IMG/VR virus record: IMGVR_UViG_3300045973_000169
Coordinates: 124,001-188,000 of that record
Direction: 5' to 3' (one strand)
DNA: 64,000 nt
This document shows, in pieces, positions 5,053-47,902 of this stretch (its first letter is position 1; each line of letters starts with the position of its first letter). The notes beneath the pieces were generated by a model, which saw only the letters and a list, made by a program, of their open reading frames with translations, made no database searches and had not been told where the DNA came from. The position numbers and the translations under genes are program-made.

Positions 5053-5454
5053 TCAAGTTGGTCTTTTACTGATCCTTTTTTTCTTGGTTTTGGCATCCCT
5101 TTTTTGTTTACTAACTTTACTTTCTTTCCCGCTGGTTTTTTTGGCATTAGGATTATTCTCCAAGTGCCACGAAAGGAATAGCATTAATTCCTTAGTGGTC
5201 ACGCTAGTTGGTTTCTTGAATACAAATCTTATATAATTAGAATGGAGTAGAGCATGACAATATAAACAAACAACTAATGCATTCTTATCATCAAACATTA
5301 AATCAGGATATTCACTCTTAGGCTTAACATGATGGCAGTGCATAAATCTTTTGTCTAAACTATACCCACATTTTTTGCAGGTATAGTTCGATTTCTCTTT
5401 ATTGCGTCGGCTCCATTCATACAATAGAGTCCTTAAATCTTTTATTTTTTTCAT
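5053..5454 (-). CDS. HNH endonuclease
   Basis: CKKCG...HCHHVKP...NALVVCLYCHALLH zinc-binding HNH pattern; basic C-terminal tail. Confidence 0.85.
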   Translation of the reverse strand: MKKIKDLRTLLYEWSRRNKEKSNYTCKKCGYSLDKRFMHCHHVKPKSEYPDLMFDDKNALVVCLYCHALLHSNYIRFVFKKPTSVTTKELMLFLSWHLENNPNAKKTSGKESKVSKQKRDAKTKKKRISKRPT

Positions 5455-6188
5455 ATTATCTCTTGTTTTAATATATTATTGATTCTATTAATATCAGAAT
5501 GTTTTATTCTTAATAGTCTTATATTATTACTAGAGCAATATTGTGTTTTTATATTATCTCTTTGTTGTATTATTTCAAAATTTTTTAATTTAGTTTCATC
5601 TGACTTATCTGAACTAAAAGAATATGGCACAGAGTGCTGTTTCCCATCAAACTCAATACAAATATTTAAATCTGGAATATAGAAATCAAATAAAAGTCTT
5701 TTATTTTTATTGCTTAAACATCCATTAAAATATTTTTGCTCTTCAAACTTTATAGATTTTTCTAACAGCCATTCTCTAATTATTTTTTCACCAATTGATG
5801 TCTTACATTTAGGACATCCACATTTATCAAGATGTGTATTTGGAGTTTGTTCAAATTCTCCATGCTTATTACAAATTATAATTACTTTAATTGAATTTCT
5901 CTTATATTCGACCTTACTATAATTATACTTATTGCCATGGATATTTTTAGCTTTTTCTATAAATCTTTCTGTTGTCAATTTTTGATTATCGAATTTGCAT
6001 AATTTACAACCATAACCGTTAAGATGATCTATGGCTCTTTGATTAAACTCTTTGTGAATTTTGCATATTATTGTAAGCTTTGTCTTTGCATTGATATAAA
6101 CAGTTTTAGAATAATCATATTTAAAATTATGTATTTTATTTGCTCTTTTTATAAATTCATCTAAAGTCAATTTTTGTTTTGTTATCAT
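5451..6188 (-). CDS. Putative homing endonuclease (DUF723-type Zn repeats + Vsr/DUF559-like nuclease)
   Basis: Two F-I-x-x-A-x-x-I-H-x-x-K-Y-x-Y-S-K...C-x-x-H...GCxxC repeats, then FDFYIPDLNICIEFDGKQH. Start placed at the second ATG (6188), which has a GGAG RBS; the ORF track starts at 6203. Confidence 0.8.
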   Translation of the reverse strand: MITKQKLTLDEFIKRANKIHNFKYDYSKTVYINAKTKLTIICKIHKEFNQRAIDHLNGYGCKLCKFDNQKLTTERFIEKAKNIHGNKYNYSKVEYKRNSIKVIIICNKHGEFEQTPNTHLDKCGCPKCKTSIGEKIIREWLLEKSIKFEEQKYFNGCLSNKNKRLLFDFYIPDLNICIEFDGKQHSVPYSFSSDKSDETKLKNFEIIQQRDNIKTQYCSSNNIRLLRIKHSDINRINNILKQEII

Positions 6189-6190
6189 AT

Positions 6191-6223
6191 TTAGGAACTC
6201 CATTTATCCTAAGTGTTAATAAC
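6191..6223 (-). promoter_or_regulatory. GTTATTAACA motif plus hairpin around the RBS of the endonuclease gene
   Basis: Minus strand: GTTATTAACA-C-TTAGGA-taaatGGAGt-TCCTAA-at-ATG. Confidence 0.5.
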
Positions 6224-6440: not shown

Positions 6441-9400
6441 TTAAACAGTATATCCTATTGCATGATAAGCGCCATCTGATGTAAAGGTTATTGTCCCTTG
6501 AACTAATGTGTCTTGGACTTTCCCTGCATTAGCAGCAGATAATAGAACTATCACGTCTCCAATATCTATAATACCACTTGGGGCTGGTATTCCACTAACT
6601 ATTGGAGCAACATCCATTTTAGCCCATGTAGGGTTTAAAGCAACTGTAAAGTCGCCAGACCCTGAAGAAGCAGCAGTAGTTAATGTCAAATTTGTCTCAA
6701 GTCCAGTAATTAATCCGTCCCCATCTAAGTCACCTGTTGATACAGAAGGACCTCCTGGATATAGAGTAGTTATTAAATTATCTGATGCTGTTCCATAGTG
6801 GTATAGAGATTTTATTGTTACCCCTGGAGTTATTCTTACTACTTGTCCTGATGTAACATTAAATCTTCTCCAGAATGCTCCACTGCTATAAGGTAAAGAT
6901 GATATTACAATTGCAGAACCATTAACTGTTATAGTAGGTGCTGGTGCTCCTTGACTCCATTCTACATAAAATTGATTTACTGGCCTTCCAACTGGTTGTT
7001 TATTTTTGGTAATTAATTCCATTAGTGTTGCTATATTATATCCATTAAGAGTAGTAGCTTCTACATTCCCTCTTACGGTAGCATTGTTAAATTCTACTGA
7101 TCCATCAGGAGATATTCTAAATCCTTTTCCACCACCACCTGATACAAAGTCAACACTTTGTATAGTACCTGCATTTATTAATGTTGCATTTAATGTTCCT
7201 GATTCAATTAAATCTGCATTTACTTTAGCAGATATAACTGCATTTGCTCCAACTGTCCCAGTAAAGATAAAATTACTTCCTATAGTTGTACTTAGCCCTC
7301 TTGTCCCGAGAAAACTAACCAATGACGATGTTGTTACTCCATCAACCAATGCAGGTCCTTGCACCTTTACCCAATTATAATAAGCTTTATTGTTAGTATT
7401 ACCAGTCCCTTCAGCTTCAGTAGATGAATAAGACCCTAAGTAAATACTATCAGCTTGAGGAGTAGTAGTCATCCCTGTACCATCAGCATTAGCAGAGTAT
7501 CTTACATGTAAGAATACTGTAGCTCCTGTTAGTCCATTTGTTCCATCTTTACCAGGTTTCAATCCTATCATAGACATGATATCTGTTGCAATGACTACTG
7601 CTCCTACAGAACCTTCTCTTATCTCAAGCACTAATTGCTGTGGCATCGAAATATAGTTTACCTGTGGAGTATATACATATGTATTAGATGTTGTATGTTG
7701 TTTTTCTACCCCATTGACAAGGAATCTATAATAGACTGTTCCTGATGTATTATAAGCAGTTGCAGTTACTGTTGCAGTAGATGGTAGTGGGGTAAGACCT
7801 GTATCAGCTAAGTAAGAAAATACCTGTGATGTAGTTGATAGTCCTACTGTTTTCCCTGGAGCACCTGTATTGCCAGTTAAGCCTGTTCTGCTTTTTGATA
7901 TTGAATATATTTTATCTATATTCGTTCCCTTATAATTTGCTCTAAATGTTACATATCCTGTATCTGTAGGGACTAATGTTATATTGTAAACACCGGTTGT
8001 AGCATTTATATTTGCAGAAATAGTAGGAGTTCCTACTATTGAATAGGTTGTAGGTCCAGCAACTCCAGTTTTATCTACTACTCCTTCAAATACAGAGAAT
8101 GTACCACCAGTACCTGCAAGACTTGGTACTGTCCCATCCATCATTGCTGCTACTACTACAGATTCATTTGTTAGGAAACCTGTTACAGCAGAAGCCCCTG
8201 TTGCGCCAGTAGAACCTTTTATTGCAAATGGTGCACCCCAAATTCCAGAAGTTGCATTAGCAGCAACTTTCTGACTCATCCATATAACGGCTGCTGTTGG
8301 GGCTGTATGCCATCCTCCAGTTGTACCATCTCCAGTTGGGATTGAAGGTGGGCTTAATAATGCATTGTCATTATAAGTTATATAAACATTAAGACCATCT
8401 ATTCCATTCGTACCATTAGTCCCATCATTCCCATCAGCGACCATTAATACCCAAGAAACACCATCCCAAAGATAAACTAAACCATTATCAGTATCCTTAT
8501 AGACCCAGTTAACTGCTGGATTAGCTGGTGGATTAGCTGACTCACCTTTCCAAACGATACTTAATCCGTTAGTCCCATTTGTTCCATTGGCTCCATTGAC
8601 TCCATCTACGGTCATTTGATACCAAGTGCCAGATTGATATACATAACTCTTTTTAGTAGTTGTGTTATAGTAAGCCCAGCCATTAGATGGTAACGTAGGA
8701 GCTGTTGCGAATGATCCCCTAAATTCAATAGAAGTACCATTTACTCCTGCTGCTCCATTAATACCATCAGTTCCATCGGTTCCTGCATAACCAATAGGGT
8801 ATGCAGTTGTACTATTCCATGTAGCTACCGATGTTGCAGTAGTTAGTAAATCAGACACTGATACTGAGATCCCATATAATGTCCAACCTGGTGTTGCTGC
8901 TCCAGGTACTAAAGCCCATCCATTCGGAGTAGTAGGAGCTGTAAAAGCTCCAGTTGCCCAAGTATATTGTGATGTACCTGCTGGATAAGTTGTAGGTGCA
9001 CTAGGAGCCCATTTATAAATCTCTAGAACTCCTACCCTTTGTCCATTAGCTCCATTTGAACCATTTGCTCCTGCAGCGCCTGAAACAAAAGCAGTTGTTG
9101 TATTCCATAATATATCAGTAAATGCTGTTGTAAGTGTATCTGCGTAAACAGTATAACATACCCATAGTGTCTGTCCTGCAACAGGAGGTAAAGGAATAGC
9201 TGACCAACCATTTAGAGTAGCTGGAGAAGTGAACTGTCCTGTACTCCAAGTATAGCGAGATGTTCCAGTAGGAAATGTTGTAGGAGTTGTTGCAGACCAT
9301 TTGTACAGTTCAAGTATAGCTGTTCTTGTTCCATTAACTCCATTGGTACCGTTAGTCCCATTTACTCCATCTACTCCTCTTATTGCAAAAGGGACACTCC

Positions 9401-12400
9401 ATGTTCCTGTAGTCGCAGATGATGATACCTTTTGGCTCATCCAATTAACTGCGGTAGTTGGGTTAGTGTGCCATCCAGCCCATGTCCCATCACCTGTAGG
9501 AGTAGCTGGATAAGCATTTAGAGGACTATCATTATAAGTTATGAATACACTTAACCCATCTGTCCCATTGGTCCCGTCGATTCCATCATTCCCATCTAAG
9601 ACCATTAAAGCCCATGCTGTACCATTCCAGATATAAACTAATCCATTGTCTGTATCTCTATAAACCCAATTCAAAACTGGGTTAGCAGGAGGATTAGCAG
9701 ATTCACCTTTCCAAACAATCGAAAGTCCATTAGTTCCATTAGTCCCGTTAGCCCCAGCTATACCATCAACAGTCATTTGGTACCATGCACCAGATTGGTA
9801 AACATAGCTTTTCTTATCTGTTGTATTGTAATAAGCCCAACCATTTGAAGGTGAGGCAGGAGCAATAGAAAAAGAACCCTTGAATTCGATTGATGTCCCG
9901 TTAACACCAACAGCACCATTAACTCCATTTGTACCATTAGTACCGGAAGCTCCCTTGATAACAAAAGGTGTTCCCCAAGTTCCAGAAGAAGAATCTAATG
10001 CAACTTTCTGACTCATCCAATTAACTGATGTTGTTGATGAAGTATGCCAACCACCTGTTGTCCCACTTGCAGTAGGTAATGCAGGAGGAGCTGTTATAGC
10101 ATTGTCATGATAGGTAATAAATACACTAAGACCATTCGATCCAGGTAATCCATTTGTTCCATCAATACCGTCATTACCATCAACAACCATTACATCCCAA
10201 GTGGTGCCATTATAAATATATACCCAACCATTAACTGTATTCTTATATACCCAATTTATAGATGGTGATATCGGAGGAGCAGCTAATTCACCTCTCCATG
10301 AAATACTTAGTCCATTCGATCCTGGAGTTCCATTAGTACCATTTATTCCGTTCGATACAAATAAAGTTGGGGTAGACCATACAGCTTCTTGTGGAGCTAA
10401 TCCATCAGATGTAAACTTTCTTGATGTTACATATATTGGGTTTGTCCCTGAAGGGATTCCATTAGTCCAGCCTGTAGCTACTGGATTGGAGAATGATCCT
10501 CCGGTTGGAGTGCTTGGAGTAGATGGATATCTTAAGAAAGAATATCCAGTCATTACTATTTGTTGTCTTGCTCCAGAAGATAATGCATTCTGTGTCTCAG
10601 TGGTTAAGTTAGACCAAGAGATAACTGCATTTGCTCCCATTGTTACCTTATCTCCAACTACTAATTCCCCAGCTTTTATATTAGCAGCAGTGATACTATT
10701 AGCAGCAATCTCATTAGCTGTTATTGCACCTACTCCTATTTTCCCTGCAGTCACTGATCCAGCAGCTAACTCAGTAGAAGAAATAGAACCTGCAGCAATC
10801 TCTCTTGCAGTGATAGAGTCAACAGTTAATTTATCCCCAGTTATACTATTAGCAGATATTCTATCTGCAGATATGACTCCTGTCTTTAAGTCACTAGCAT
10901 CAAGCTTACCTCTAATAGTTAATGTATTGGCAGTAGTTACACCCCAATCAATTCTGTTATTTAGGTCAGTACCTGAGAAGTAAAATTTACCAGTGTTATC
11001 TAAGTAATTCTTCCATACACCATTCTCAATAAAACCTATCATTCTATTGTTTGCAAATAGCCCTGACCCTAGATAAGATGGCGAAGCCAATATTGAAGGA
11101 GGTGTTATACCAGACCCAAAAGAGTTCCCTAATATAGAATTAGTGCTAGATGTAGTATCAGGGAGTAAGCCATATTGCCATACTTCACATGTAGATATGT
11201 TATGTCCTACTATAGGACTTGTTGTTATCTTTCCAATAACTGCACAGTTTGCATCCATTTGAAATTGGATCCATTGGTTGCTATTATTGTCATATTGCCA
11301 AGACATCCCAGAAACTTTTTGAACAAATACCATATTAACTGGAGATCCAGAAACAACAAATCTATTTGCGAAACTAAGATCTATTAATATATATCCAGTA
11401 ACATTCTGTTTACTTGTAAACACAGGGGCTTTAGGGATATTATATTCTACATTAAGATCTTGACCATTATTCGAACCATATAGGATCTTACCACTTACAT
11501 CTGCTGGTGCTCCAGCACTATCGAATCCATGGATATAAGCTTGCCCTAGTTGAGGAGTTGTATAGTTAATATAATTCTTTTTAATAGCGATTCTTTGTAT
11601 AGTGCTTGAAGGAATATCACTTAGTGTATTATAACCAATTCCTCCAGCAATAGTAAGTTGACCTTTTATATCTAGTGAGCCAGTGCTTTCTCTATAAGTA
11701 ATACTATTTCCAGCAGGGTCACCAAGACTGAAACTATTTAATCCATTAATATCTTTCCCTAAGAAGAAGCCTTTCCCAGTATTGAAGGCTGTCTGTCCGG
11801 ACATTATACTATTACCAGATGCCAGAGATAGATTCCCTACTAAGTTTATTGAACTCCCATCCCATGTAAATCTATTCCCAGCAGAATCTCCTATAGAGAA
11901 CCTAGGGACTCCTGAGATCATTCCTAACCAGAATCCTTGCCCAACGTTGAATGCACTTTGTCCTGATCTTAAGTAACTATTATTTCCTAATATTGTTAAT
12001 GGTCCAGTTTCTATTTCTCCAGCGTTACCACCGATAGAAGATAGAGTTGAACTTGTAGTACATATAATAGGAGCTGAGTAAGCTGAATAGTTCCCAGTTC
12101 TATCAAACGATCTTACATATATATAGTAACTTGTCTTAGGCATTAACCTAATCAAAGCTGAGTTCTTTATAACAATAGCAACTCTTGTAGTCGTATTAAT
12201 AGGAGGTCCAATATCAGTTTTAGCATATACTTCATATCCAGCTAAGTCACTAGCATTTACATCATCCCAATTGATTAAGGCATCTGATAGACCAGCAGAT
12301 TGAGTCACGTTTTGTGGAATCCCAGGAGCAGTAGTATCATTATTAATACTACGTGGCATAGCAGTACACCATGCAGATGCATTCCCTTGTTTACTTACAG

Positions 12401-12953
12401 ACATTACTTTTATATTCCAAGTAGTATTTGGTAGTAGATTAGAGAATGTATATGAAGGTAATGCTGTACTATATTGTTGAGTAATAGCTGGGCCACTAGT
12501 GCTTGCTATTTGCACAATGAATCTATCAAATGCAGGGAAAGAACCACTTATCCCATCCCATGTAGCTGTGAATGAATAAAGATTTATCTGACCATTATAT
12601 TGTTGTGTATTAGCAGATAGAGATAGATTAGTTGGGACTGGTGGAGTGATACCATCTTCTGATCTTACAAATCCAGTAACTAAACTAGCCATATTTTCTT
12701 CATCTATTAATGTTACATAGTCAGATGAATTACCAATATTTCTCTTTTTAAACTTAAGAATATTCCAATTAAGATCATACCAAAGAGACCCAGTTGCAAA
12801 ACCAGTTGGCATTGAGTATGACTTATGTGAATTAGTTATGTCTAGCAGTATTGCATCTAACTTATCAAAGTTACTATTGATAGGCAGATCCCATGTACCA
12901 CTATATTCTCCTCTAAAAGGAGTTTCTAAATTGTAGTTAGGAGTAAATGACAT
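6441..12953 (-). CDS. Giant tail fibre / receptor-binding protein (FN3 domains, pentapeptide-like repeats, collagen-like linkers, dockerin-like tip)
   Basis: Two FN3-like units (PPVPTNL..., DTTAPGIPQNV...YYIYVRSFDRTGNYSAYS), ITAxxIAAxS repeats, G-x-N-G triplets, tandem duplicated modules. Confidence 0.85.
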   Translation of the reverse strand: MSFTPNYNLETPFRGEYSGTWDLPINSNFDKLDAILLDITNSHKSYSMPTGFATGSLWYDLNWNILKFKKRNIGNSSDYVTLIDEENMASLVTGFVRSEDGITPPVPTNLSLSANTQQYNGQINLYSFTATWDGISGSFPAFDRFIVQIASTSGPAITQQYSTALPSYTFSNLLPNTTWNIKVMSVSKQGNASAWCTAMPRSINNDTTAPGIPQNVTQSAGLSDALINWDDVNASDLAGYEVYAKTDIGPPINTTTRVAIVIKNSALIRLMPKTSYYIYVRSFDRTGNYSAYSAPIICTTSSTLSSIGGNAGEIETGPLTILGNNSYLRSGQSAFNVGQGFWLGMISGVPRFSIGDSAGNRFTWDGSSINLVGNLSLASGNSIMSGQTAFNTGKGFFLGKDINGLNSFSLGDPAGNSITYRESTGSLDIKGQLTIAGGIGYNTLSDIPSSTIQRIAIKKNYINYTTPQLGQAYIHGFDSAGAPADVSGKILYGSNNGQDLNVEYNIPKAPVFTSKQNVTGYILIDLSFANRFVVSGSPVNMVFVQKVSGMSWQYDNNSNQWIQFQMDANCAVIGKITTSPIVGHNISTCEVWQYGLLPDTTSSTNSILGNSFGSGITPPSILASPSYLGSGLFANNRMIGFIENGVWKNYLDNTGKFYFSGTDLNNRIDWGVTTANTLTIRGKLDASDLKTGVISADRISANSITGDKLTVDSITAREIAAGSISSTELAAGSVTAGKIGVGAITANEIAANSITAANIKAGELVVGDKVTMGANAVISWSNLTTETQNALSSGARQQIVMTGYSFLRYPSTPSTPTGGSFSNPVATGWTNGIPSGTNPIYVTSRKFTSDGLAPQEAVWSTPTLFVSNGINGTNGTPGSNGLSISWRGELAAPPISPSINWVYKNTVNGWVYIYNGTTWDVMVVDGNDGIDGTNGLPGSNGLSVFITYHDNAITAPPALPTASGTTGGWHTSSTTSVNWMSQKVALDSSSGTWGTPFVIKGASGTNGTNGVNGAVGVNGTSIEFKGSFSIAPASPSNGWAYYNTTDKKSYVYQSGAWYQMTVDGIAGANGTNGTNGLSIVWKGESANPPANPVLNWVYRDTDNGLVYIWNGTAWALMVLDGNDGIDGTNGTDGLSVFITYNDSPLNAYPATPTGDGTWAGWHTNPTTAVNWMSQKVSSSATTGTWSVPFAIRGVDGVNGTNGTNGVNGTRTAILELYKWSATTPTTFPTGTSRYTWSTGQFTSPATLNGWSAIPLPPVAGQTLWVCYTVYADTLTTAFTDILWNTTTAFVSGAAGANGSNGANGQRVGVLEIYKWAPSAPTTYPAGTSQYTWATGAFTAPTTPNGWALVPGAATPGWTLYGISVSVSDLLTTATSVATWNSTTAYPIGYAGTDGTDGINGAAGVNGTSIEFRGSFATAPTLPSNGWAYYNTTTKKSYVYQSGTWYQMTVDGVNGANGTNGTNGLSIVWKGESANPPANPAVNWVYKDTDNGLVYLWDGVSWVLMVADGNDGTNGTNGIDGLNVYITYNDNALLSPPSIPTGDGTTGGWHTAPTAAVIWMSQKVAANATSGIWGAPFAIKGSTGATGASAVTGFLTNESVVVAAMMDGTVPSLAGTGGTFSVFEGVVDKTGVAGPTTYSIVGTPTISANINATTGVYNITLVPTDTGYVTFRANYKGTNIDKIYSISKSRTGLTGNTGAPGKTVGLSTTSQVFSYLADTGLTPLPSTATVTATAYNTSGTVYYRFLVNGVEKQHTTSNTYVYTPQVNYISMPQQLVLEIREGSVGAVVIATDIMSMIGLKPGKDGTNGLTGATVFLHVRYSANADGTGMTTTPQADSIYLGSYSSTEAEGTGNTNNKAYYNWVKVQGPALVDGVTTSSLVSFLGTRGLSTTIGSNFIFTGTVGANAVISAKVNADLIESGTLNATLINAGTIQSVDFVSGGGGKGFRISPDGSVEFNNATVRGNVEATTLNGYNIATLMELITKNKQPVGRPVNQFYVEWSQGAPAPTITVNGSAIVISSLPYSSGAFWRRFNVTSGQVVRITPGVTIKSLYHYGTASDNLITTLYPGGPSVSTGDLDGDGLITGLETNLTLTTAASSGSGDFTVALNPTWAKMDVAPIVSGIPAPSGIIDIGDVIVLLSAANAGKVQDTLVQGTITFTSDGAYHAIGYTV
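8210..10320 (-). repeat. In-frame modular repeats inside the tail fibre
   Basis: Three copies of GLSI.W.GE...NWVY...ITY.D...GWHT...WMSQKV, two of GTSIEF.GSF...GWAYYNTT...WYQMTVDG, two of LE.YKW...GTS.YTW.TG.FT; boundaries approximate. Confidence 0.85.
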
Positions 12954-12964
12954 ATTGGGCTCTC

Positions 12965-14032
12965 TTAGTTAGTATGTTTAAATAGAAAATAAAATCTACA
13001 AAATGCTGGCATATTAAGATGGGCCCAGCCACGAGTTTCAAATTCTTTTGTAGCTAAAATTGACCCTGACCCACCTTGTTTTGAGTCTGCATCATAAGGG
13101 AATGTTCCTAATAATGCCCCGGCCCCATATCGTACCTGGTCATCTCCTTGGTATGAGTGACTATGTGATGGTAGTTCTGCTGCTGTTAATACATGATAGT
13201 TTTCACCACTTCTATGGTGATCACCTTCTACAAAATTAACAGAACCAGATCTATGAACAGGGTCTCCATAATATGCACCAGTAGGAAATCTATTAACCAT
13301 ATTGACGCCTACGGAACTCCCACTTTCATCAATGTGGATTGGAGCATTTGGTCCACCTGTATATCCATTAAGGACTCTCCACTTTAAAAATGCTCCTTTG
13401 CCTATTCCATTAGCATCGAAAAGATCTTCATATTTATTACCAGTTAATCCTAAATCATACCACATTATAACTGACCCAATAGGGAATCCATCCATTGCTT
13501 CAAGTTTTGCTTTTTCTGTAGGTGTAAGTAATCCTGAATGTTGTGATGTAGCATTGCCTATAGCAATATTTGGTGTAGTTGTAGATGTTGTAATTGTTAC
13601 TGCAGGTGTATCTGATGTTACATTATAAACAGTTCCCTTAGCAGCTAATAGTCCATTAAGAACTGCATTAGTTGGCAAGTCATTTAACTTAGTCCAATGA
13701 GCACTCGACATTGATCCTGGAATAGTTGCAGAAGAAGCATCAATCCCAATTATAGGAGCCGTTATAGTCCCTGTCTTTGTTATAGGAGCAGTTGCAGTTA
13801 AACTTAAAATACCATTGGTTTCAGCTATCAAAGTTGAAACAACATCAAAGTGTGTCTTTGACATAAACCCATGGTTAGTTGAACTAGCTAATGGGTGGCA
13901 TAAAGATGAGGCTCCTCCACCTCCATGAACATTTATATGAGCATCGAGATAGCTTCTTATCTCTTCAATATGTATTTTTCTTATACGTGTAATTAATGCC
14001 TGTATTGGCTCTTGAGTCCATGTTAATGCCAT
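12965..14032 (-). CDS. Tail fibre/baseplate protein with collar-like C-terminal domain
   Basis: A-S/T-x-x-x-x-G-x-M-S fibre repeats; PIGSVIMW...NRFPTGA...GENYHVLTAAELPSHSH...HLNMP collar-type signature. Confidence 0.7.
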   Translation of the reverse strand: MALTWTQEPIQALITRIRKIHIEEIRSYLDAHINVHGGGGASSLCHPLASSTNHGFMSKTHFDVVSTLIAETNGILSLTATAPITKTGTITAPIIGIDASSATIPGSMSSAHWTKLNDLPTNAVLNGLLAAKGTVYNVTSDTPAVTITTSTTTPNIAIGNATSQHSGLLTPTEKAKLEAMDGFPIGSVIMWYDLGLTGNKYEDLFDANGIGKGAFLKWRVLNGYTGGPNAPIHIDESGSSVGVNMVNRFPTGAYYGDPVHRSGSVNFVEGDHHRSGENYHVLTAAELPSHSHSYQGDDQVRYGAGALLGTFPYDADSKQGGSGSILATKEFETRGWAHLNMPAFCRFYFLFKHTN

Positions 14033-14043
14033 CTCAAAACTCC

Positions 14044-15654
14044 TTATATACTAAATTCTATTATTGTTGAAGTTGATGCATCAAGGTTTTTTGAAAGTAT
14101 ATCATTAACCTTTTTTATATAATTACTACTATAATCATCAGGAGTTATAATAGTACCCTGTTTTGTGTATCTTATAAGCCCATTTGAAATTGGTTTTTGT
14201 AAATTAACACATGCAACTAATGTATCATTTGTTGGGATAATGACATCTCCATTTATAATATCATTATATACTACATCAATGTTTGCTTTACATGCATTAT
14301 TCTTATCAATTATTTTATTACCGTAAGCTGATAATTCAATGAACTCACTACTGTTATTAAAAGTATATGGATTGATTGTCGTTAATATTGCTACAGTGAA
14401 ATAATTATTAACTACTGCATCAAATTCATAATCTTCTATTGTCCTGAATACATTTAAGTCAGTAGAATTATATCCTATCAAAGCATGTGATATTGACTTC
14501 CCTGTATCTATAACATTAGGCTTAATGTAAATAGCAACATAGTCAACATTATTATTAAATATATTCTTAATATCAATCCCTTTATACTCAAAGTAATACT
14601 CATCTGTATAGTGGGATGAATAGACTACATCTGTTTCTAATAATTTAATTGGTAATTCAATAACTCCATCAATATTAAAATTATTAATTAATGAATATAG
14701 AACTCCATCCTTATATTCTGTCCCACTCAATACTTCATTAGATGTAAATGCATACTTAAGAATCTTTGTATAGAAATCATACACATAAATAAAGATATTT
14801 TCTAATGCATTCTTAGCTATTGGGTATTGAGTTTGAATGAAGTTTTCTAATAATTTCTTACATTTCTTATCACTTATCTTCTTATATCTAAAGTCAGTAT
14901 CAAGATCTTGGAGATAAAACTCTGGGACCCAATACTTATATTTTGAACTAAGAGTAAAGCTTGAATTCAATATACCTACATACCAAGGATTGTCTAAATT
15001 GCCATAAGGGTATCTAAATAATTTAGTATCAGATAGATATGCTATATATAATTCTTTATCGTAAGAGGTCGAGATTATATCATTTATATAAATATACTTC
15101 TTAGTATCAAGAGTTTTATTTAAAACATTTATCCAAGAAGATTCTTCATACACTGGAATCAAACTTAAAAGAACTTTCTTTACACTATTCAAAGTAGAAG
15201 TATATTCTAAGAAAAGAATCTTATTTTGTTTATTAATATAGATGTTTGTTATATCCTGCTGTTTATCTACTATATATAAATCTTTACTAATTACAGCTCC
15301 AAAGAAGTCAATGATCTTTATAGCATCATCTTCTACGGCTTCACTTATTATATGCTTATAAAACAAAGGAACTGTTGTCCCATCGATAGCTGAATACTTT
15401 ACTACATCTGTAATAATGAATGTATCACTCTTTGGATTATGTATCTCGGGCCCATTAACGATTTCATAGCCACCAGATAGGAACTCTTTAGGAAAGTATC
15501 CAGATGAAGCACTTATAAAATCAGATGGGAATAAGTCAATAGAATTATCTTTATGATATATTAATGGGATAGAAGATGTTGGTATCTCAAACCCCTCTCT
15601 TATAAAAGATAATTTTATATTATTAGTAGTTGGAATCTCTAAGTCGAATCTCAT
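14044..15654 (-). CDS. Putative baseplate/structural protein
   Basis: 536-aa ORF in the baseplate block; no recognised motif. Confidence 0.55.
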   Translation of the reverse strand: MRFDLEIPTTNNIKLSFIREGFEIPTSSIPLIYHKDNSIDLFPSDFISASSGYFPKEFLSGGYEIVNGPEIHNPKSDTFIITDVVKYSAIDGTTVPLFYKHIISEAVEDDAIKIIDFFGAVISKDLYIVDKQQDITNIYINKQNKILFLEYTSTLNSVKKVLLSLIPVYEESSWINVLNKTLDTKKYIYINDIISTSYDKELYIAYLSDTKLFRYPYGNLDNPWYVGILNSSFTLSSKYKYWVPEFYLQDLDTDFRYKKISDKKCKKLLENFIQTQYPIAKNALENIFIYVYDFYTKILKYAFTSNEVLSGTEYKDGVLYSLINNFNIDGVIELPIKLLETDVVYSSHYTDEYYFEYKGIDIKNIFNNNVDYVAIYIKPNVIDTGKSISHALIGYNSTDLNVFRTIEDYEFDAVVNNYFTVAILTTINPYTFNNSSEFIELSAYGNKIIDKNNACKANIDVVYNDIINGDVIIPTNDTLVACVNLQKPISNGLIRYTKQGTIITPDDYSSNYIKKVNDILSKNLDASTSTIIEFSI

Positions 15655-15663
15655 AAGGCTCTC

Positions 15664-16929
15664 TTAATTATCGTAAACTGCGACATGTTCTGATGCATCG
15701 ACAGGGACAGGTAAATTTACTAGTCCTAGGATGTCATAAATTAGATCTAAGAAGCCATAGTTCCCACCAAGGACAATATACCTTTTTGGATTTCCTTCGC
15801 CTACAGCGACCTCTGAGGTGTCTTGAATATAGAAGATATCTCCTCTTATAGATCCATTCACTCCGCCAGCAGAAAATAGATTTGTGAGATACTTCATTGT
15901 TGCTGAACTGTTTTCAGTATCATATATAATGCATTGGTTCGGTGGTATTAGTGTATTGAGTGTTTCATTATGCATATGGAATGGCTTATACATGATAGCA
16001 TATTGGTTATACTTTGTTAATAGTGGTGATTGAACTGTAAAATAAGTTGACTTAATATCATGGGTATCAGTAACAGGAGTATAAGTAATAGGCATCCTTG
16101 TTCCTGAGTTGAGCCAATAAGCTCCACCATTATCACCAACTGATTCCCAGTTAGCATTTAGTATAAAGCATTTAGGTTGCCCTGTAGTAAAATCATATGA
16201 ATGACCAATACAATATTCACACGTTCTTCTTTCACAGGTTTGTGAACCAGATGCAGACGATGAATATATACATGGAGTCTTTATAGTCCAGTATGAATTA
16301 TTCTCTAATGGGAGTGCATAAGCTTTATTATAAATCCCATCATAAATATTTGGGTCAGCAGCATACATAGACTTAATTGAGAATGATATAGAAGGAGATG
16401 CTTTCTTAATCTTGAGGTATCTAATAGTTCCGGTGATAGGCAACGAAACCCATTTATAAGTTCCACCAGTATCAGGTAAATCTACCCAAGTATTGGCTAA
16501 CCCATTTAGGTTAAATACTTGCCCTGCTCCATTATAATAAACTCCAAACTCATATCCATTATAAGCATTGACTGGGATACCTACATTAATAAGATCAGTT
16601 GGGAAATCTAATATCCCTGTTGTAGAATTATATGCAGTAGCATCAAGTCCCCATACCATATCTATAAATTGGAGAGATGGTATTAAATTCATTGGTTTAT
16701 ATAACTTATCTGTTCTGCCTATAGCACTAGAGATATTAAAAAGCATTTTTCTATTTTCATCTTTAGTGACATGATAGTCAACGCCATTCCCTAGGAAAGA
16801 CTCTAGCATAGAGAATGCAGTTTCTAACTGTGCAAATGTCCCACTAAATTTAGTAGGAGAAGGATTCTCTGCAGTTAAGAATCTAGTTTGCTTAGGTAAG
16901 AATTGTGGGAATAATTGTGTTTCTGACAT
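15664..16929 (-). CDS. Putative structural protein with Cys cluster
   Basis: 421-aa ORF with GGAG RBS; PC...CERRTCEYC...C cluster. Confidence 0.55.
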   Translation of the reverse strand: MSETQLFPQFLPKQTRFLTAENPSPTKFSGTFAQLETAFSMLESFLGNGVDYHVTKDENRKMLFNISSAIGRTDKLYKPMNLIPSLQFIDMVWGLDATAYNSTTGILDFPTDLINVGIPVNAYNGYEFGVYYNGAGQVFNLNGLANTWVDLPDTGGTYKWVSLPITGTIRYLKIKKASPSISFSIKSMYAADPNIYDGIYNKAYALPLENNSYWTIKTPCIYSSSASGSQTCERRTCEYCIGHSYDFTTGQPKCFILNANWESVGDNGGAYWLNSGTRMPITYTPVTDTHDIKSTYFTVQSPLLTKYNQYAIMYKPFHMHNETLNTLIPPNQCIIYDTENSSATMKYLTNLFSAGGVNGSIRGDIFYIQDTSEVAVGEGNPKRYIVLGGNYGFLDLIYDILGLVNLPVPVDASEHVAVYDN

Positions 16930-16941
16930 TCTATCTCTCCG

Positions 16942-19107
16942 TTAAGTTACTTGTAAAATAAATGGATTTACTATATGAGCATCTACGCCAGGACATCTAT
17001 TAGGCTTTGTAACACCTAAATCATATTCTGGAGTATGAATACATCCAATACTTTCACTATCTAATTTAAAATATTTTCTATATCCAATATTTGGATTAAT
17101 ACATCTTTTATTAATTGCATCTGAATAAATACAGTAGTAAGAACATGAACGTATTCCAAATGGGTTCTTCATATATTCTGTAGCAGTTAGATAACCAAAT
17201 CCTTGTGTCTTTGTATCATACCCATTAAGTGTATATCCAGTTAACATGAAAGGAGTTTCTGACTCTACACTCTTTACTATTATATCTTTTATGTTTGATG
17301 AAAGTTTAATTACTCCATCATCATATTCAGAAACTATTTCTATAATCTTATCTGATACTAACCAAGCTCCAGATAAATCTGGGTTTGATATAGGTAAAGG
17401 ATTTTCATATGTTATCACTGTAACAGAGTTAAACTTATCTTCTTTAACTGTCAATGTATCAAATGGTAAGATCCCATCTTTATATTTCCCAGCTAAGTCA
17501 TACTTATTTATGCTGCTTATGGTTTTTGGGATTGTCATCATTGTTAGTGAAAACTGAGATGATCCATTAATTGTTTTTATAAATAAGTCCCTAAAACTAA
17601 TATTTATATCATTGTCTATTGATATATCAATTGGCTTTATATATGAACTATAGATTTTATTATTAGCACTTGATAATTTTATATAAGCAATCTTTCTGCC
17701 TGTTACAATATAGTCTTTTATATTACCACTTGTATAGTATTCGTCTACTCCATTTTCAGAATAGATAGCATTATATTTCCCAAGGATAGGATCGTCACTT
17801 TGTACTGTATATAAATACATACCATTAAGAATAGTTTGTTTATCTTTAAGGTCTAAGCTTGCTCCTATTGATGGATGAATATAAGGAAGCGTAATTCTTC
17901 CTCTTAATACTCCATCAACTAGAACATTACTCATCCATTCTTTTTGGATATATAATCCTATGTTTGAACTATCAGATACTAGACTAGCTTTTATAGTACC
18001 ATCAATCGTACTCGTCGAAGTATAATTAGGACTATTAGATTCTTGCCATATTGCATTATTAGAAATTATTTTTGTAGTAATCTTCTTATTAGGGATTGGA
18101 AGTCCACTTATATTCGTTATCCTTGTTTCAATTCCAAGTACCTCTGAATAAGATATTATATCTTTATTCTCAACGACAGTTAGTTCTAAGTTAGTTGGGA
18201 TATTATTAGTATCATAACTTTGATAAGCACAGATAATCCCATTCTTAAAGTTGATTGATTTAGAATCTATTGTTTCAACTGAAGGTATGATATCAGGTCT
18301 GTTTAGACTTCTGTTAATTTGAGTAAATGTTATAATAGGCATTACCTCAAAGCTAGCAACAACATTTGTCCCAATAGGGAATGCTGTACTATTTATAATT
18401 ATAGTTCCATTATAGATGGTATAGTCATCTGAAGACATATTTTCTAAATTTAAATTAGAAACAGGAAATTCAGGTAATGCAAATATATTACTTCCATCAA
18501 CTATATTACCTAAAAGACATTTTTCATAATGGATTGTATCTGTACTCAAGTGTACTGTATTGTCAATTATAGTATATTTATATTCTTCTTTGGAAGATTT
18601 AAATGTTGTAAGTAGACCATCAGCATGAAAAGGGATATACTTAAATTGTTTTTGCTTTTTAAAGTATCCAGGGAATTGAAAAGATGTAGTAAATATATCT
18701 ATCGAATTAATATCAAAATCACTGTCAAGAACACATAAATATTTATCTAGACTCTTTTCTGTAGTTTTAAATATTCTATTAACTGACCAACTAGTAATAT
18801 CTTTATGAACTGTTAAATCTCCGCCATTGAATACTGGTATCTTTTTCCCTGATTTATCTAATATAGAATTAAGAGAAAGTTTCCCTGTACTAGTTATCCC
18901 AGATACAATAAAATGATCAGGTACACAATTCATATTATTGAAATTAGATGTATTAATTGATCCTTTATTTTGATTTAATGATACAGCTTTTATATCATAC
19001 TTCATTGGGGTCAAAGATGAGCTATCAGAATAAAGTAAATCTGATAATTTATCTAACCCTTTTTGTCCTAAGAAATTAATTATATTAAACTCTAGATCAA
19101 ATTTCAT
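16942..19107 (-). CDS. Putative baseplate protein with Ig-like segment and Cys-rich C-terminus
   Basis: 721 aa; GLPIPNKKIT...STIDGTIKA resembles a bacterial Ig-like unit; C-terminal CSYYC...C...C...C. Confidence 0.55.
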   Translation of the reverse strand: MKFDLEFNIINFLGQKGLDKLSDLLYSDSSSLTPMKYDIKAVSLNQNKGSINTSNFNNMNCVPDHFIVSGITSTGKLSLNSILDKSGKKIPVFNGGDLTVHKDITSWSVNRIFKTTEKSLDKYLCVLDSDFDINSIDIFTTSFQFPGYFKKQKQFKYIPFHADGLLTTFKSSKEEYKYTIIDNTVHLSTDTIHYEKCLLGNIVDGSNIFALPEFPVSNLNLENMSSDDYTIYNGTIIINSTAFPIGTNVVASFEVMPIITFTQINRSLNRPDIIPSVETIDSKSINFKNGIICAYQSYDTNNIPTNLELTVVENKDIISYSEVLGIETRITNISGLPIPNKKITTKIISNNAIWQESNSPNYTSTSTIDGTIKASLVSDSSNIGLYIQKEWMSNVLVDGVLRGRITLPYIHPSIGASLDLKDKQTILNGMYLYTVQSDDPILGKYNAIYSENGVDEYYTSGNIKDYIVTGRKIAYIKLSSANNKIYSSYIKPIDISIDNDINISFRDLFIKTINGSSQFSLTMMTIPKTISSINKYDLAGKYKDGILPFDTLTVKEDKFNSVTVITYENPLPISNPDLSGAWLVSDKIIEIVSEYDDGVIKLSSNIKDIIVKSVESETPFMLTGYTLNGYDTKTQGFGYLTATEYMKNPFGIRSCSYYCIYSDAINKRCINPNIGYRKYFKLDSESIGCIHTPEYDLGVTKPNRCPGVDAHIVNPFILQVT

Positions 19108-35315: not shown

Positions 35316-38300
35316 TTAAACCTTACCTAATTCTTTTTTAAATTGCCAATAGTAACTTAGTACTGCATTTATGTGATCTGTATTTTTCATAAATTGAGGT
35401 CCATGTCCTGCATTGTATGCTGATACTGCTCTAGACACATCCCCATTTTCAGTTTGTATTAAATCAAATAAATACTTAACTCCATAGTCTATATTTGTTT
35501 TAGGATCAAATGGATCTTTACCATGGGTTCCATCCATAGAAGGATGAGCTTTCCCATTTATTTGCATTAAGCCTCTATCATTCTTGTCCTGTACCCCTAT
35601 TGCTTTTGGGTTCCATCCACTCTCTCTTTGTATCAATCCATAGACAACTTCTGGCTCAAGTATATATTTCTTTGTTCCATTTAGTTTACTTAATGCTTCA
35701 TCAACCATAGGCTTTAACTGGTTAAACATACTATCTTGTCTTACTATTTCTTCTGTGATCGAATATGATTTTAGTTTCATAGATCCACTAGGTGTTGATG
35801 CAAAAGCATTACCAGTAAATTGTATCCCTGGATCCAATATATCAGCAGCAAGTTTAACTGGTTCATAATCACTGAGAGAACTATATGCTTCATTAAATGC
35901 ATCTTTAGCATTTATAACCATACCCTTCATATGCATCCACATGTCATTATTTCTATAACCTTCAAGACCCGGCATTAACATAGAATCTTTAAACCAGATT
36001 GGCGAAATAACTACGATGTTTCCTTTTGTAGCAGCTTCTATTGCAAACATCTCAACTATAGATGGGAGTTCCATTACAACACTGAGAGCTAATAGCATTG
36101 ATACATTCCTTGCTAATGGTCCACCTAATAATTTCTTTCCACCTTCAATAAGTTTCGATCCAACAGCTTTTGTACCAGCAGAATATTTACCACCAAATAA
36201 ACCTTTAGGCTTCATCTTATTTAATAATACTTCATACTCTTTTTCTGTATTAACATTTATCTTAGTGTCTTTTAAAAGATCTTTCTGTGATTTTGATAAA
36301 TCTTTCCAAGCTGTTTCTTTCTTCGCTAATATCTTTTCCATCGAAGCTATTACTTGCTTATCTACAATAGTCTCGGCGGCAAGTGCTGCATCTACTGCAG
36401 CAGCCTTAAGTTCTCTTGTGTAATCGGCGGTCTGTGTAGCCCATCTATTTAAGAAGTCAGGCACTTTCTTAGGCATTAAGTTAGATAGATATTCTCCTGG
36501 AGTTATCCTTCTGAATACAGTTTTTACTGCTCCAGCAAAAACATCAGAGAAAACATATCTTCCACTTTGAACGACTGAATTACCAGCGGCAACAAGTCCT
36601 CTTTTTGCTCCACTTGATCCAACAACTGCTGCTGTTTTACCAGCATAAGCAAGTGCTGTATCTGCATAAACAGAATATTTCCATTCGACTACATTCTCTG
36701 CCCAGTTAAATTTATTAAGAGCATCTAGTGTATCAGTAGGTAAGCCATTGTATTTATTTACAAATGTCTCATTTTCTCTTGCTTGTGCAAAATGTTTATT
36801 TGCTTCAAGTAATCCATTAGCTACAAGTGAGAATCCTAATGATGTCCAAGGACCTGTTGTTGCTCCAAGGACTAATGATGTAGCATCTATTGCTAATCCT
36901 GCAGCTCCTCGTTCATTCCAATAGTTACTTACCTTACCAATTATATATTTACGTCTTAAATCACCAGCAGTTGAGTAAGCTGTATCATTTATCTTACAAA
37001 CCATATTAGGGACAATATGAGTAGTGAAACCCATTTCAGAATCAAACTTATGGATTACAGTTTCTACTTGAACCCAACCATACATCTTAGATACTTTATC
37101 ACAAATATAAATCTTATCATAAGGTTCAATCTTCGAGTTTCCTCTAAGAATAAGTGTCCCGCCATATAGACGTTCTACTCCTTCCTTAAGTAATCCAAGT
37201 GCATATTGTTGAGATAGTCTTTCATCATTTGTCCAGTCAATAACTGCGAACTTCCTTCTTAAGGCATGATTAAATATATCTGCATTAGCAACATACTCTT
37301 CTGGCTTACCAGACCCATCAGACGATTTTGAAATTACAACTGAATTCCATCCTCTTTCTGGAGTTGCTCTTACTCCATTATAAATTATATTATCCCATGA
37401 TGTTGCTATATGATGTTTCTGGAAAGGAACCATTGGTAAGATTCCAGTAGATAAAGTCTCAGGATCTATATTCCCTAGTGTGTCTCTTCTAGGACTATAG
37501 TCCATAATAGCTTTTCTGTATCTATCATTGTTATTTCCAGACTCTCTTGTTGCATCTGATCTCTCAATAAATGAAGGAGCCATTGCAAGAAGTGGATCAT
37601 CTGTTCTGAAATAATGGAAGTCGGGATCTCCTAAGAACAATGTAGACCTAGAGCCATAAGGTCTTACATCTAAAGCATATCCAGGATAGATCCTTTGGAT
37701 GTCTCTTAGCACATCCCAAACAGTCCTTTGGTTATTTGCTTTAAGTGTTACATTAGATCCAGAAGCACTTGCCCATATATCAAAAGCGAATATATTTGCA
37801 TCTATGGGATTATGTCCATTCTCAAGAGTGTCAGCCATATGTCTAAATAATTGAGTTGTAGCTTTATCTGCATTAAATAAATCTCCACGAAGTCTACCAT
37901 AAAGATTGCTAAATGTAGTCGAGAATCTTTCATTCCCTTTACATGACTCTCTGAATAAAGTCATTTTCCCAGCCTCAATCATCTTTCTACCATAATCACC
38001 TTCGGCTCCAAATGATGCATAGGCTAATGCTCCAACGCTTGTCCCGACTGCCGCTGCCGCTAAAGGAGATGCACCTATCATCCCAATAGCTGCTGCCCCA
38101 GCGAATGTTCCACCAGTGACTAATGCACTTGTACCCGTTCCAATAAGCCCAGTAATATTAGCTCTTGACATAATGAAGTTCATCAGGTTCTTATTTCTTC
38201 TGGAGAACTGTTCTATATGTGAACCAAACATTCTACCGAAATGGATAATGCTTGGATTGCTTCTTAACATCTGGCTAATTAAGTCACTAAAGTTTGAACC

Positions 38301-42917: not shown

Positions 42918-42920
42918 TAA

Positions 42921-47900: not shown

Positions 47901-47902
47901 TG

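What the first reader, a model, noticed from the sequence alone, without database searches (positions are those of the whole stretch)
6530..6740. Dockerin-like Ca-binding module at the tip of the giant tail fibre
Seen: GDLDGDGLITGLE followed by MDVAPIVSGIPAPSGIIDIGDVIVLL near the C-terminus. Knowledge: GD-x-D/N-G-D-G is a dockerin/EF-hand loop. From memory (unverified), the DVAP...G-x-P-x-P-x-G-x-IDIGD variant ends many Geobacteraceae surface proteins. Inference: a host-derived dockerin used to bind cohesin-like surface proteins (receptor mimicry), which would also hint at a Desulfobacterota host.
Basis: partly seen in the sequence, partly recalled or inferred. Interest (0 to 1): 0.62.

Follow-up and report, generated by a model that had tools for sequence, protein, structure and literature searches.

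The report
Dockerin module at phage fibre tip
The last 200 residues of a 2170-residue tail fibre of an uncultured 207-kb pond phage hold a real calcium-loop dockerin module of a subtype otherwise found at the ends of large surface proteins of Gram-negative environmental bacteria, which suggests, but does not prove, that the phage attaches to its host by binding a cohesin on the host surface.

Summary
The two motifs lie at residues 2074-2086 and 2113-2138 of a 2170-aa ORF (window 6441-12953, minus strand).

They form a dockerin:
- An HMM built only from bacterial modules scores this site 35.7 bits and hits nothing else in the 206.6-kb genome.
- The family profile hits solved dockerins at E 1.6e-8.
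- An AlphaFold model (pLDDT 81) finds dockerins as the top 14 of 48,161 PDB chains (Z 7.4-4.5, next 3.2).
- Pfam Dockerin_1 does not score the phage sequence itself. The second calcium loop carries an 8-residue insertion.

It occurs equally in Nitrospirota, Gamma- and Alphaproteobacteria and Armatimonadota, and the phage copy shows no lineage preference.

The module is part of a ~208-aa tip cassette shared (37-43% identity) with the J-type fibre of an unrelated Mu-like siphophage.

All five carrier genomes tested also encode cohesins, four of them fused to a secretin. Cohesin binding by the phage is therefore plausible but untested.

A Desulfobacterota host is not supported: the phage has 34% GC, the module's codon usage matches the rest of the gene, and the host is unknown.

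The parts
6441..12953 (-). Tail-fibre gene, 2170 aa (P0001); last gene of the tail/baseplate block
   Evidence: ORF list and translation. PHROG tail-fibre families phrog_3904 (4e-39) and phrog_25191 (3e-71); Pfam fn3.
7050..7223 (-). Phage_Tail_Tip-like stretch (residues 1911-1968) immediately before the tip cassette
   Evidence: Pfam PF09327 at E 8.8e-4, 19.5 bits, below the cut-off of 22. Weak, positional evidence only.
6444..7067 (-). Exchangeable tip cassette, residues 1963-2170 (beta-sandwich + dockerin + C-terminal strands)
   Evidence: Shared with the J-type protein P0002 (its residues 1299-1508). phmmer E 3e-30. BLASTP 37% identity, with the similarity starting sharply at NVEATTLNGYNI.
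6795..6974 (-). Predicted beta-sandwich, residues ~1994-2053
   Evidence: AlphaFold model m1f9f824474e5, strands at model residues 35-94, pLDDT 75-80. Only generic beta-sandwich matches, Z <= 5.5.
6516..6746 (-). Dockerin module of the DVAP subtype, residues 2070-2146. Helices 2084-2096, 2108-2111, 2131-2142
   Evidence: Bacteria-only HMM 35.7 bits. Model pLDDT 80.8, pTM 0.72. VIA ranks 1-14 are all dockerins, Z 7.4-4.5. hhalign of the phage-only profile against classical dockerins: probability 80%, E 1.4e-5.
6696..6731 (-). Calcium loop 1, residues 2075-2086: D-x-D-x-D-G-x-x-x-x-x-E, all canonical ligand positions filled (position 12 is Glu)
   Evidence: Read from the sequence; alignment A4.
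6555..6614 (-). Calcium loop 2 with an 8-residue insertion, residues 2114-2133 (D2114 ... S2126-G-I-I-D2130-I-G-D2133)
   Evidence: Alignment of the family profile to the C. thermocellum Xyn10B dockerin 2ccl_B/1ohz_B places an 8-residue insertion after 'DV'. D2114, P2117 and D2133 fall in invariant columns.
6444..6515 (-). C-terminal 24 residues after the dockerin (2147-2170). Conserved between the two phage proteins, absent from the bacterial modules
   Evidence: Alignment A4. Low model confidence. VIA alignments of the sandwich extend to residue 211 of the model, which hints that the last strand returns to the sandwich.

Best explanation
Shown:
- The C-terminal ~208 residues of the 2170-aa fibre form a discrete cassette: a small beta-sandwich followed by a two-loop, three-helix dockerin module.
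- The module belongs to a dockerin subtype (second loop expanded by 8 residues, 'DVAP...PxPDGxIDIGD'). In bacteria this subtype is the extreme C-terminus of large (700-2660 aa) proteins.
- All five carrier genomes tested also encode cohesin domains.
- The same cassette caps the J-type central fibre of an unrelated Mu-like siphophage, at the position where phage lambda J has its receptor-binding domain (the lambda point is from my own knowledge).

Inferred:
- The cassette is the receptor-binding tip.
- Its dockerin, held rigid by two Ca2+ ions, binds a cohesin-type domain displayed on the host envelope, the same socket the host uses to anchor its own secreted proteins. A trimeric fibre would give multivalent binding.
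- The cassette moves between phages as a unit. It was not taken recently from this phage's host.
For: Dockerin identity:
- Bacteria-only HMM 35.7 bits on P0001 and 41.7 bits on P0002; unique in the genome.
- Family profile against PDB sequences: dockerins are the top hits, 2y3n_B at 1.6e-8. 2ccl_B and 1ohz_B align across both repeats at 2.5e-7 and 5.4e-7.
- Phage-only profile against 13 classical dockerins: hhalign probability 80%, E 1.4e-5.
- AlphaFold module pLDDT 80.8. An unbiased structural scan of 48,161 chains ranks 14 dockerins first (Z 7.4-4.5), then drops to Z 3.2. The two-domain model gives the same result.
- Calcium-ligand positions are filled in both loops.

Tip role:
- The gene closes the tail module.
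- The cassette starts right after a Phage_Tail_Tip-like stretch.
- It is shared with a protein carrying FNIII-A_GpJ and Phage-tail_3 domains, located in a tail operon.

Cohesin partner plausible:
- PF00963 scores above its cut-off in 5 of 5 carrier genomes, against 1 of 14 control genomes.
- In three of the five genomes a DVAP-dockerin gene lies within roughly 1-20 kb of a cohesin gene.
- One bacterial relative has a weak choice-of-anchor Q match just before its dockerin.
Against: - Pfam Dockerin_1 gives no hit on the phage sequence even at E <= 10 or on the genome. The bacterial relatives match it only over their first repeat, and only one of four scores above the cut-off.
- Both phage copies lack the basic pair (R-K) that about three quarters of the bacterial modules carry on the last helix, and helix 1 is degenerate. 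They may therefore have lost or changed the cohesin-binding surface.
- No host, and so no cognate cohesin, is known.
- The cohesins found in carrier bacteria are mostly C-terminal extensions of secretins. From general knowledge of secretin topology these could face the periplasm, out of a phage's reach.
- The tip cassette is very rare (one relative among 1.84 billion cluster representatives), so nothing can be said about selection on it.
- Structural evidence is a prediction from a 34-sequence alignment.
Confidence: 0.45

Rival explanations
1. The dockerin-like module is only a calcium-stabilised structural element of a receptor-binding tip. The receptor itself (glycan or protein) is recognised by the beta-sandwich or by the C-terminal strands, and no cohesin is involved.
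For: - Many non-cellulosomal dockerins have no known partner (own knowledge).
- The phage copies have lost the conserved basic pair and part of the helix-1 pattern of the bacterial family.
- The sandwich resembles carbohydrate-binding and adhesin domains at low Z (5aot_A CBM Z 4.4, SdrD Z 4.0).
- The two phages that share the cassette differ by 22 GC points, which fits a widespread glycan target better than one specific protein.
Against: - Both calcium loops and the overall dockerin fold are conserved between two phage copies that are only 37-43% identical.
- The module scores well against the bacterial anchor family, whose carrier genomes all have cohesins.
- The sandwich matches are generic and below the level the tool regards as informative.
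Confidence: 0.3
2. The dockerin docks the fibre to another phage-encoded protein, such as an adhesin, a chaperone or a neighbouring fibre, and so serves virion assembly rather than host recognition.
For: - Dockerins are protein-assembly modules by definition.
- The tail block encodes several further fibre-like proteins (12965-19107) whose folds were not examined.
Against: - No cohesin (PF00963) in the 206.6-kb genome even at E <= 1.
- The genes downstream of the fibre are HNH endonucleases, not chaperones or adhesins.
- The cassette is C-terminal, whereas fibres usually attach to the virion by the N-terminus (own knowledge).
- The same cassette works on a J-type fibre in a phage with an otherwise unrelated tail.
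Confidence: 0.1
3. It is a chance Asp/Gly-rich motif or a generic EF-hand or FG-GAP calcium loop with no dockerin relationship.
For: The only Pfam hits on the phage stretch are weak FG-GAP matches (E 0.03) over 13 residues.
Against: - The profile match covers both repeats and the linker.
- The predicted fold is helical and ranks dockerins far above calmodulin-type EF-hands: TM about 0.55-0.59 against about 0.33, and Z 7.4 against <= 3.2.
- The stretch is conserved in a second phage.
Confidence: 0.03

Closest known systems
Type I dockerin modules of cellulosomal enzymes (e.g. C. thermocellum Xyn10B dockerin, PDB 1OHZ/2CCL; C. cellulolyticum 2VN5; R. flavefaciens ScaH dockerin 8AJY)
   Same: - Two tandem calcium loops, each followed by a helix, joined by a short linker helix.
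- Predicted fold superposes at Z 7.4-6.8, rmsd 2.0-2.4 A over 56-65 residues.
- The profile aligns over both repeats.
   Different: - The second loop has an 8-residue insertion.
- Loop 1 ends in Glu rather than Asp.
- The Ser-Thr and Lys-Arg recognition residues of type I dockerins (own knowledge) are absent.
- Pfam PF00404 does not score the phage sequence.
- The carrier is a virion fibre, not a secreted enzyme.
- The module is followed by 24 more residues.
DVAP-type C-terminal dockerin-like modules of large secreted proteins in Geobacteraceae, Nitrospirota, Gamma-/Alphaproteobacteria and others (non-cellulosomal dockerins)
   Same: - Same subtype: GD-x-[DN]-G-D-G loop, ~20-residue linker, D-V-A-P...G-x-P-x-P-x-G-x-[IV]-[DN]-x-x-D loop.
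- 35.7 bits against a profile of these modules.
- 23-41% identity.
   Different: - The bacterial modules are the very end of the protein and finish in an aromatic residue; the phage module is subterminal.
- Loop-1 position 12 is Asp in >= 90% of bacterial copies and Glu in both phage copies.
- The conserved L-R-K-A helix is L-S-A-A in the phage.
- The phage module is embedded in a beta-sandwich cassette that no bacterial protein shares.
C-terminal receptor-binding domain of lambda-type tip attachment protein J
   Same: - Position: the cassette follows a Phage_Tail_Tip-like stretch.
- In P0002 it ends a protein with FNIII-A_GpJ and Phage-tail_3 domains, inside a tail operon.
- It appears to be an exchangeable C-terminal specificity module.
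   Different: - No sequence or fold similarity to a solved J receptor-binding domain was found.
- Here the host fibre is a 2170-aa side or long fibre of a contractile-tailed jumbo phage.
Type II X-module-dockerin (XDoc) dyads of cellulosomal scaffoldins (PDB 2B59, 4WI0, 5G5D)
   Same: An Ig-like beta-sandwich is directly followed by a dockerin. These entries appear among the weak whole-model matches.
   Different: The matches are not significant (E 0.35-0.5, TM about 0.2). The relative orientation of the two domains is poorly predicted (pTM 0.44).
Phage endolysin with C-terminal classical dockerin (IMG/VR contig, L062 5026-6189)
   Same: A viral protein that carries a dockerin (PF00404, 42 bits), presumably for attachment to a host envelope component.
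   Different: It is a classical two-repeat dockerin without the insertion, fused to a GH25 muramidase. It acts in lysis, not as a virion fibre.

Membership tests
Dockerin (Pfam PF00404 Dockerin_1) | Sequence scores above the curated Pfam cut-off (22.9 bits) | tested here: not met
   No hit on P0001, its last 221, 131 or 91 residues, or P0002, even at E <= 1 to 10. No hit in the whole genome. Bacterial relatives P0003-P0006 hit only with their first repeat at 16.9-28.6 bits; only P0005 is above the cut-off.
Dockerin (Pfam PF00404 Dockerin_1) | Two tandem repeats, each a 12-residue calcium loop with Asp/Asn at positions 1, 3, 5 and an acidic residue at position 12, followed by a helix | tested here: met
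   Loop 1 (2075-2086) is D, D, D, E. Loop 2 has D2114 at position 1, then an 8-residue insertion, then S2126 (position 5), D2130 (position 9) and D2133 (position 12). Helices 2084-2096 and 2131-2142 follow the loops. Loop 2 is atypical because of the insertion and has no ligand at position 3.
Dockerin (Pfam PF00404 Dockerin_1) | Homology to solved dockerins detectable by profile methods | tested here: met
   Family profile A5 against PDB sequences: 2y3n_B at 1.6e-8; 2ccl_B at 2.5e-7 over both repeats. Phage-only profile A6 against classical dockerins A7: hhalign probability 80%, E 1.4e-5.
Dockerin (Pfam PF00404 Dockerin_1) | Three-helix dockerin fold | tested here: met
   This is a predicted structure, not a solved one. 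Model pLDDT 80.8, pTM 0.72. VIA ranks 1-14 are all dockerins, Z 7.4-4.5, and the next hit is Z 3.2. The two-domain model reproduces this. Foldseek E-values are not significant, but the best TM scores (0.54-0.59) are dockerins.
Dockerin (Pfam PF00404 Dockerin_1) | Binds two Ca2+ ions and needs them to fold | not testable with these tools
   Only the ligand residues can be read from the sequence.
Dockerin (Pfam PF00404 Dockerin_1) | Binds a cohesin module | tested here: inconclusive
   No cognate cohesin is known. One co-fold with a heterologous Geotalea secretin cohesin gave no verdict. The phage genome has no cohesin. Carrier bacteria have cohesins in 5 of 5 genomes.
DVAP-type C-terminal dockerin-like anchor of Gram-negative environmental bacteria (no curated model found) | Second loop of the form D-V-A-P-x4-G-x-P-x-P-[DSN]-G-x-[IVL]-[DN]-x-x-D, with the first loop GD-x-[ND]-G-D-G | tested here: met
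   HMM from 36 bacterial modules: 35.7 bits at residues 2070-2141. Invariant D, P and D columns are shared. The phage module scores 20-44 bits against DVAP modules and <= 18 bits against classical dockerins.
DVAP-type C-terminal dockerin-like anchor of Gram-negative environmental bacteria (no curated model found) | Module is the extreme C-terminus, ending 2-3 residues after the last helix, usually in Trp/Phe/Tyr | tested here: not met
   In 30 of 32 DVAP loci the stop codon follows directly. The phage proteins continue for 24-29 residues and lack the terminal aromatic residue.
Phage receptor-binding tip of J-type / long tail fibres | C-terminal, exchangeable module at the distal end of a fibre protein encoded in the tail gene block | tested here: met
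   The gene is the last in the tail block. The cassette boundary is sharp at residue 1963, and the cassette is shared between a myophage fibre and a siphophage J-type protein.
Phage receptor-binding tip of J-type / long tail fibres | Binds a host surface receptor and determines host range | not testable with these tools
   The phage is uncultured (one pond metagenome) and the host is unknown.

The most novel reading that the evidence does not exclude
Phages have captured the C-terminal anchoring module of Gram-negative surface proteins as a portable receptor-binding cassette. They adsorb by docking, in a Ca2+-dependent way, into the host's own cohesin sockets. These sockets may be the ring of cohesins carried by a secretin multimer in the outer membrane, which a trimeric fibre tip could bind multivalently. 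This would be a new class of protein receptor recognition ('anchor mimicry'). It would also give a function to the unexplored cohesin-dockerin systems of Geobacteraceae, Nitrospirota and relatives.
Probability: 0.2. Interest if true: 0.8.

Novelty: new variant of a known kind. Interest (0 to 1): 0.58.

Why it matters
Phage receptor-binding proteins are usually lectin-like or bind outer-membrane porins. A fibre tip built around a dockerin would mean the phage uses a host protein-protein assembly system as its receptor.

The idea can be tested directly: express the tip, add calcium, and fish for cohesins.

It could also turn cohesin repertoires into a host-prediction feature for uncultured phages.

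As a by-product, the work points to an undescribed cohesin-dockerin network in Gram-negative sediment bacteria, made of secretin-cohesin fusions and up to eight DVAP-dockerin proteins per genome.

If instead the module is only a calcium clamp, the finding is a modest addition to the list of domains recruited into fibre tips.

Tried and rejected
- Pfam and NCBIfam scans of the phage tip: no dockerin model hit, only weak FG-GAP matches. FG-GAP was rejected as an explanation because the match covers 13 residues and the fold is helical.
- phmmer of the tip against PDB sequences: only noise.
- tblastn of the tip against 50,697 GenBank phages: no match.
- IMG/VR scan with the tip: 77 pattern matches, none confirmed.
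- Word-index protein search with region 2060-2150: only the query itself.
- Foldseek of the two-domain model against PDB: nothing significant. Foldseek of the module: E-values about 1, so only the TM ranking is usable.
Repeated with the three-sequence alignment A3.
- Co-fold of the phage module with the cohesin of the Geotalea secretin plus two Ca: no verdict (score 0.01; mark 0.34). This is not evidence for or against binding. The pair is heterologous and the host is unknown.
- Host identification failed:
  - The tail sheath has no match in GenBank phages.
  - The tube-like protein and PhoH give only 25-34% identity, to Bacillus and other jumbo phages.
  - Relatives cannot be drawn for a virus record.
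  - Only one sequencing run (a pond metagenome, probably the source) holds the gene.
- Literature searches for a dockerin in a phage fibre or receptor-binding protein found no precedent. They found one viral contig with dockerin domains next to a NosD-like protein (PMC13452462) and a template-based mention of a cellulosomal CBM in an E. coli phage tailspike (PMC5967307). Searches for secretin-cohesin fusions found nothing relevant.
- Read laying was not used, and no alternative genetic code was needed.
Full report
**What is there.** The window is part of a 206,638-bp virus record: 33.8% GC, 19 tRNA genes, identical 20-bp ends (a circular assembly), and rated complete. The gene at 6441-12953 (minus strand) encodes a 2170-aa protein, P0001. 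PHROG tail-fibre families and fn3 domains match it. It is the last gene of a block encoding a tail sheath, a baseplate wedge protein, further fibre-like proteins and three giant proteins, so the phage is a contractile-tailed jumbo phage.

**Is it a dockerin?** Pfam's Dockerin_1 model does not score the phage sequence at all. Four other lines of evidence agree that it is one.
- **Library scan.** A phmmer scan of 1.84 billion cluster representatives with the last 211 residues found five proteins. Four bacterial ones (P0003-P0006) match only the motif-bearing stretch, with library-wide E 1.6e-4 to 7.4e-4. Each ends in ...GDVAPLVNGxPAPDGxIDIGDVVVILRKAxGLxxW. Pfam recognises the first repeat of all four as Dockerin_1, one above the cut-off.
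- **Independent profile.** A genome scan seeded with the three most similar of the four (P0003, P0004, P0006) gave 54 loci, 32 of them of this 'DVAP' type. An HMM built from those 32 loci plus the four proteins from the library scan, with no phage sequence, scores P0001 at 35.7 bits exactly at residues 2070-2141. It hits nothing else in the six-frame translation of the whole phage genome.
- **Link to solved dockerins.** The family profile hits solved dockerins as its best PDB matches (1.6e-8). It aligns over both repeats with the C. thermocellum Xyn10B type I dockerin, showing an 8-residue insertion in the second calcium loop. A profile of the two phage copies alone aligns with 13 classical dockerins at 80% probability, E 1.4e-5.
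- **Predicted fold.** An AlphaFold model of the module (pLDDT 80.8, pTM 0.72) has the loop-helix, short helix, loop-helix layout. In a search of 48,161 representative PDB chains that does not depend on Foldseek, ranks 1-14 are all dockerins (Z 7.4-4.5). The next hits are unrelated at Z <= 3.2. The two-domain model gives the same result.

Loop 1 is a complete D-x-D-x-D-G-x5-E calcium loop. Loop 2 keeps D2114, S2126, D2130 and D2133.

**The Geobacteraceae recollection.** It is right but not exclusive.
- DVAP-type modules end 8 large open frames in a Geomonas genome and 3 in a Geotalea genome. Roughly 40% of the DVAP loci found are Desulfuromonadales or Geobacteraceae.
- The rest are Nitrospirota, Gammaproteobacteria, Dongiaceae, other Pseudomonadota and Armatimonadota.
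- The phage module scores 20-44 bits against DVAP modules of all these groups, with no ordering by taxon, and <= 18 bits against classical dockerins. Its best match, P0003, lies on a 43%-GC contig next to a PEP-CTERM protein.

**Origin and host.**
- The module's third-position GC (0.20) equals that of the whole gene (0.19).
- The entire last ~208 residues, starting sharply at residue 1963, recur at 37-43% identity at the end of P0002. P0002 is a 1513-aa protein with FNIII-A_GpJ and Phage-tail_3 domains. It lies in the tail operon of a Mu-like-head siphophage contig of about 56% GC.
- Both phage copies share characters absent from the bacterial family: Glu instead of Asp at loop-1 position 12, loss of the R-K pair on the last helix, and about 25 extra C-terminal residues.

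The simplest reading is an old capture into a fibre-tip cassette that has since moved between phages. It is not a recent loan from this phage's host. The host remains unknown:
- Only one run, a pond metagenome, holds the gene.
- Cultured relatives are too distant to help.
- A 34%-GC phage is at least 9 points below every DVAP carrier sampled (0.43-0.67). However, its 19 tRNAs, mostly reading A-ending codons, warn that its composition may differ from its host's.
- A Desulfobacterota host is therefore not supported, though it is not strictly excluded.

**How it probably works.** The cassette sits where J-type fibres carry their receptor-binding domain: after a Phage_Tail_Tip-like stretch and at the C-terminus of a J-type protein. 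In bacteria the DVAP module is a terminal appendage of large secreted proteins. All five carrier genomes tested also encode cohesin domains above Pfam's cut-off, against 1 of 14 control genomes. In three of them a cohesin gene lies on the same contig, within about 1-20 kb of a DVAP-dockerin gene. I therefore favour Ca2+-dependent docking of the fibre tip to a cohesin-type domain on the host envelope (confidence about 0.45 for the full chain). The main rival is that the module is only a calcium-stabilised scaffold and the receptor is read by the sandwich (about 0.3). Docking to another virion protein is less likely: the genome has no cohesin at E <= 1, and the downstream genes are HNH endonucleases.

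**Seen on the way.**
- In four of the five carrier genomes the cohesin is fused, through a Pro/Ala-rich linker, to the C-terminus of a secretin (Secretin_N + Secretin + Cohesin). In Geotalea this gene lies next to pseudopilin genes. Whether this cohesin faces outwards is unknown. From general knowledge of secretins, their C-termini lie on the periplasmic side, which would make it a substrate-capture device rather than a phage receptor.
- A second Geotalea protein combines a signal peptide, an N-terminal cohesin and a C-terminal classical dockerin-like pair.
- An IMG/VR contig encodes a GH25 endolysin ending in a classical dockerin.

**Novelty.** I found no description of a dockerin as the tip of a phage fibre. 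The nearest is a viral contig with dockerin domains beside a NosD-like protein (PMC13452462). Several large unnamed viral proteins in BFVD show dockerin-like local folds at TM 0.47-0.59, not significant, so the theme may be wider than these two phages. I class it as a new variant of a known kind: a receptor-binding tip built from a known protein-docking module.

Noticed in passing
L060:10815-13259 (-) (Geotalea); also L057:1-1866, L059:1-1878, L058:2-1881: Secretin proteins (TPR/STN + Secretin_N + Secretin) carry a C-terminal cohesin domain behind a Pro/Ala-rich linker. This occurs in 4 of the 5 bacteria with DVAP-dockerins. In Geotalea the gene lies next to two pseudopilin genes. In the Nitrospirota MAG the fusion is split into two frames.
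   Followed up: partly
L060:2622-3938 (-) (P0007): A 438-aa Geotalea protein with a signal peptide, an N-terminal cohesin and a C-terminal pair of classical dockerin-like calcium loops. It looks like an adaptor of a Gram-negative cohesin-dockerin network.
   Followed up: partly
G003, G004, G005 contigs: DVAP-dockerin genes and cohesin genes lie on the same contig within about 1-20 kb in three of five genomes. One Nitrospirota contig has three DVAP-dockerin genes within 23 kb.
   Followed up: no
L062:5026-6189 (+) (IMG/VR contig): A phage GH25 muramidase (endolysin) ending in a classical dockerin (PF00404, 42 bits). This is a dockerin used as a lysin targeting module.
   Followed up: partly
window 5451-6203 (-), 5053-5454 (-), 54336-55061 (-): Three HNH/homing-endonuclease genes are inserted in the structural block. 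Two of them lie directly downstream of the fibre gene.
   Followed up: no
window 35316-53749 (-): Three consecutive giant ORFs of 2533, 1659 and 1948 aa. The first ends in a lytic transglycosylase domain; the other two have no PHROG match.
   Followed up: no
window 56942-58207 (-): PHROGs calls this ORF 'major head protein' (phrog_9206, 1.7e-17). Its only GenBank phage matches are a 'tail tube protein' and virion structural proteins of Bacillus jumbo phages (26% identity), and it lies just downstream of the sheath gene. It is more likely a tube-related protein.
   Followed up: partly
whole genome G000 (outside the window: 23.7-91.3 kb): 19 tRNA genes, mostly with U at the first anticodon position. 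The genome ends share 20 identical bases (a circular assembly).
   Followed up: partly
BFVD entries A0A516LCZ1, A0A516MDL0, A0A516MGL7, A0A516LDN7, A0A516M0J5: Large (830-1374 aa) unnamed viral proteins contain a local fold resembling the module (TM 0.47-0.59, E not significant). They may be further dockerin-bearing virion proteins.
   Followed up: no
P0006 residues 486-523: A weak 'choice-of-anchor Q' match (NF041518, 18.8 bits, below cut-off) lies directly before the DVAP dockerin of a beta-helix/NosD-like protein. This is consistent with the module acting as a C-terminal surface anchor.
   Followed up: no
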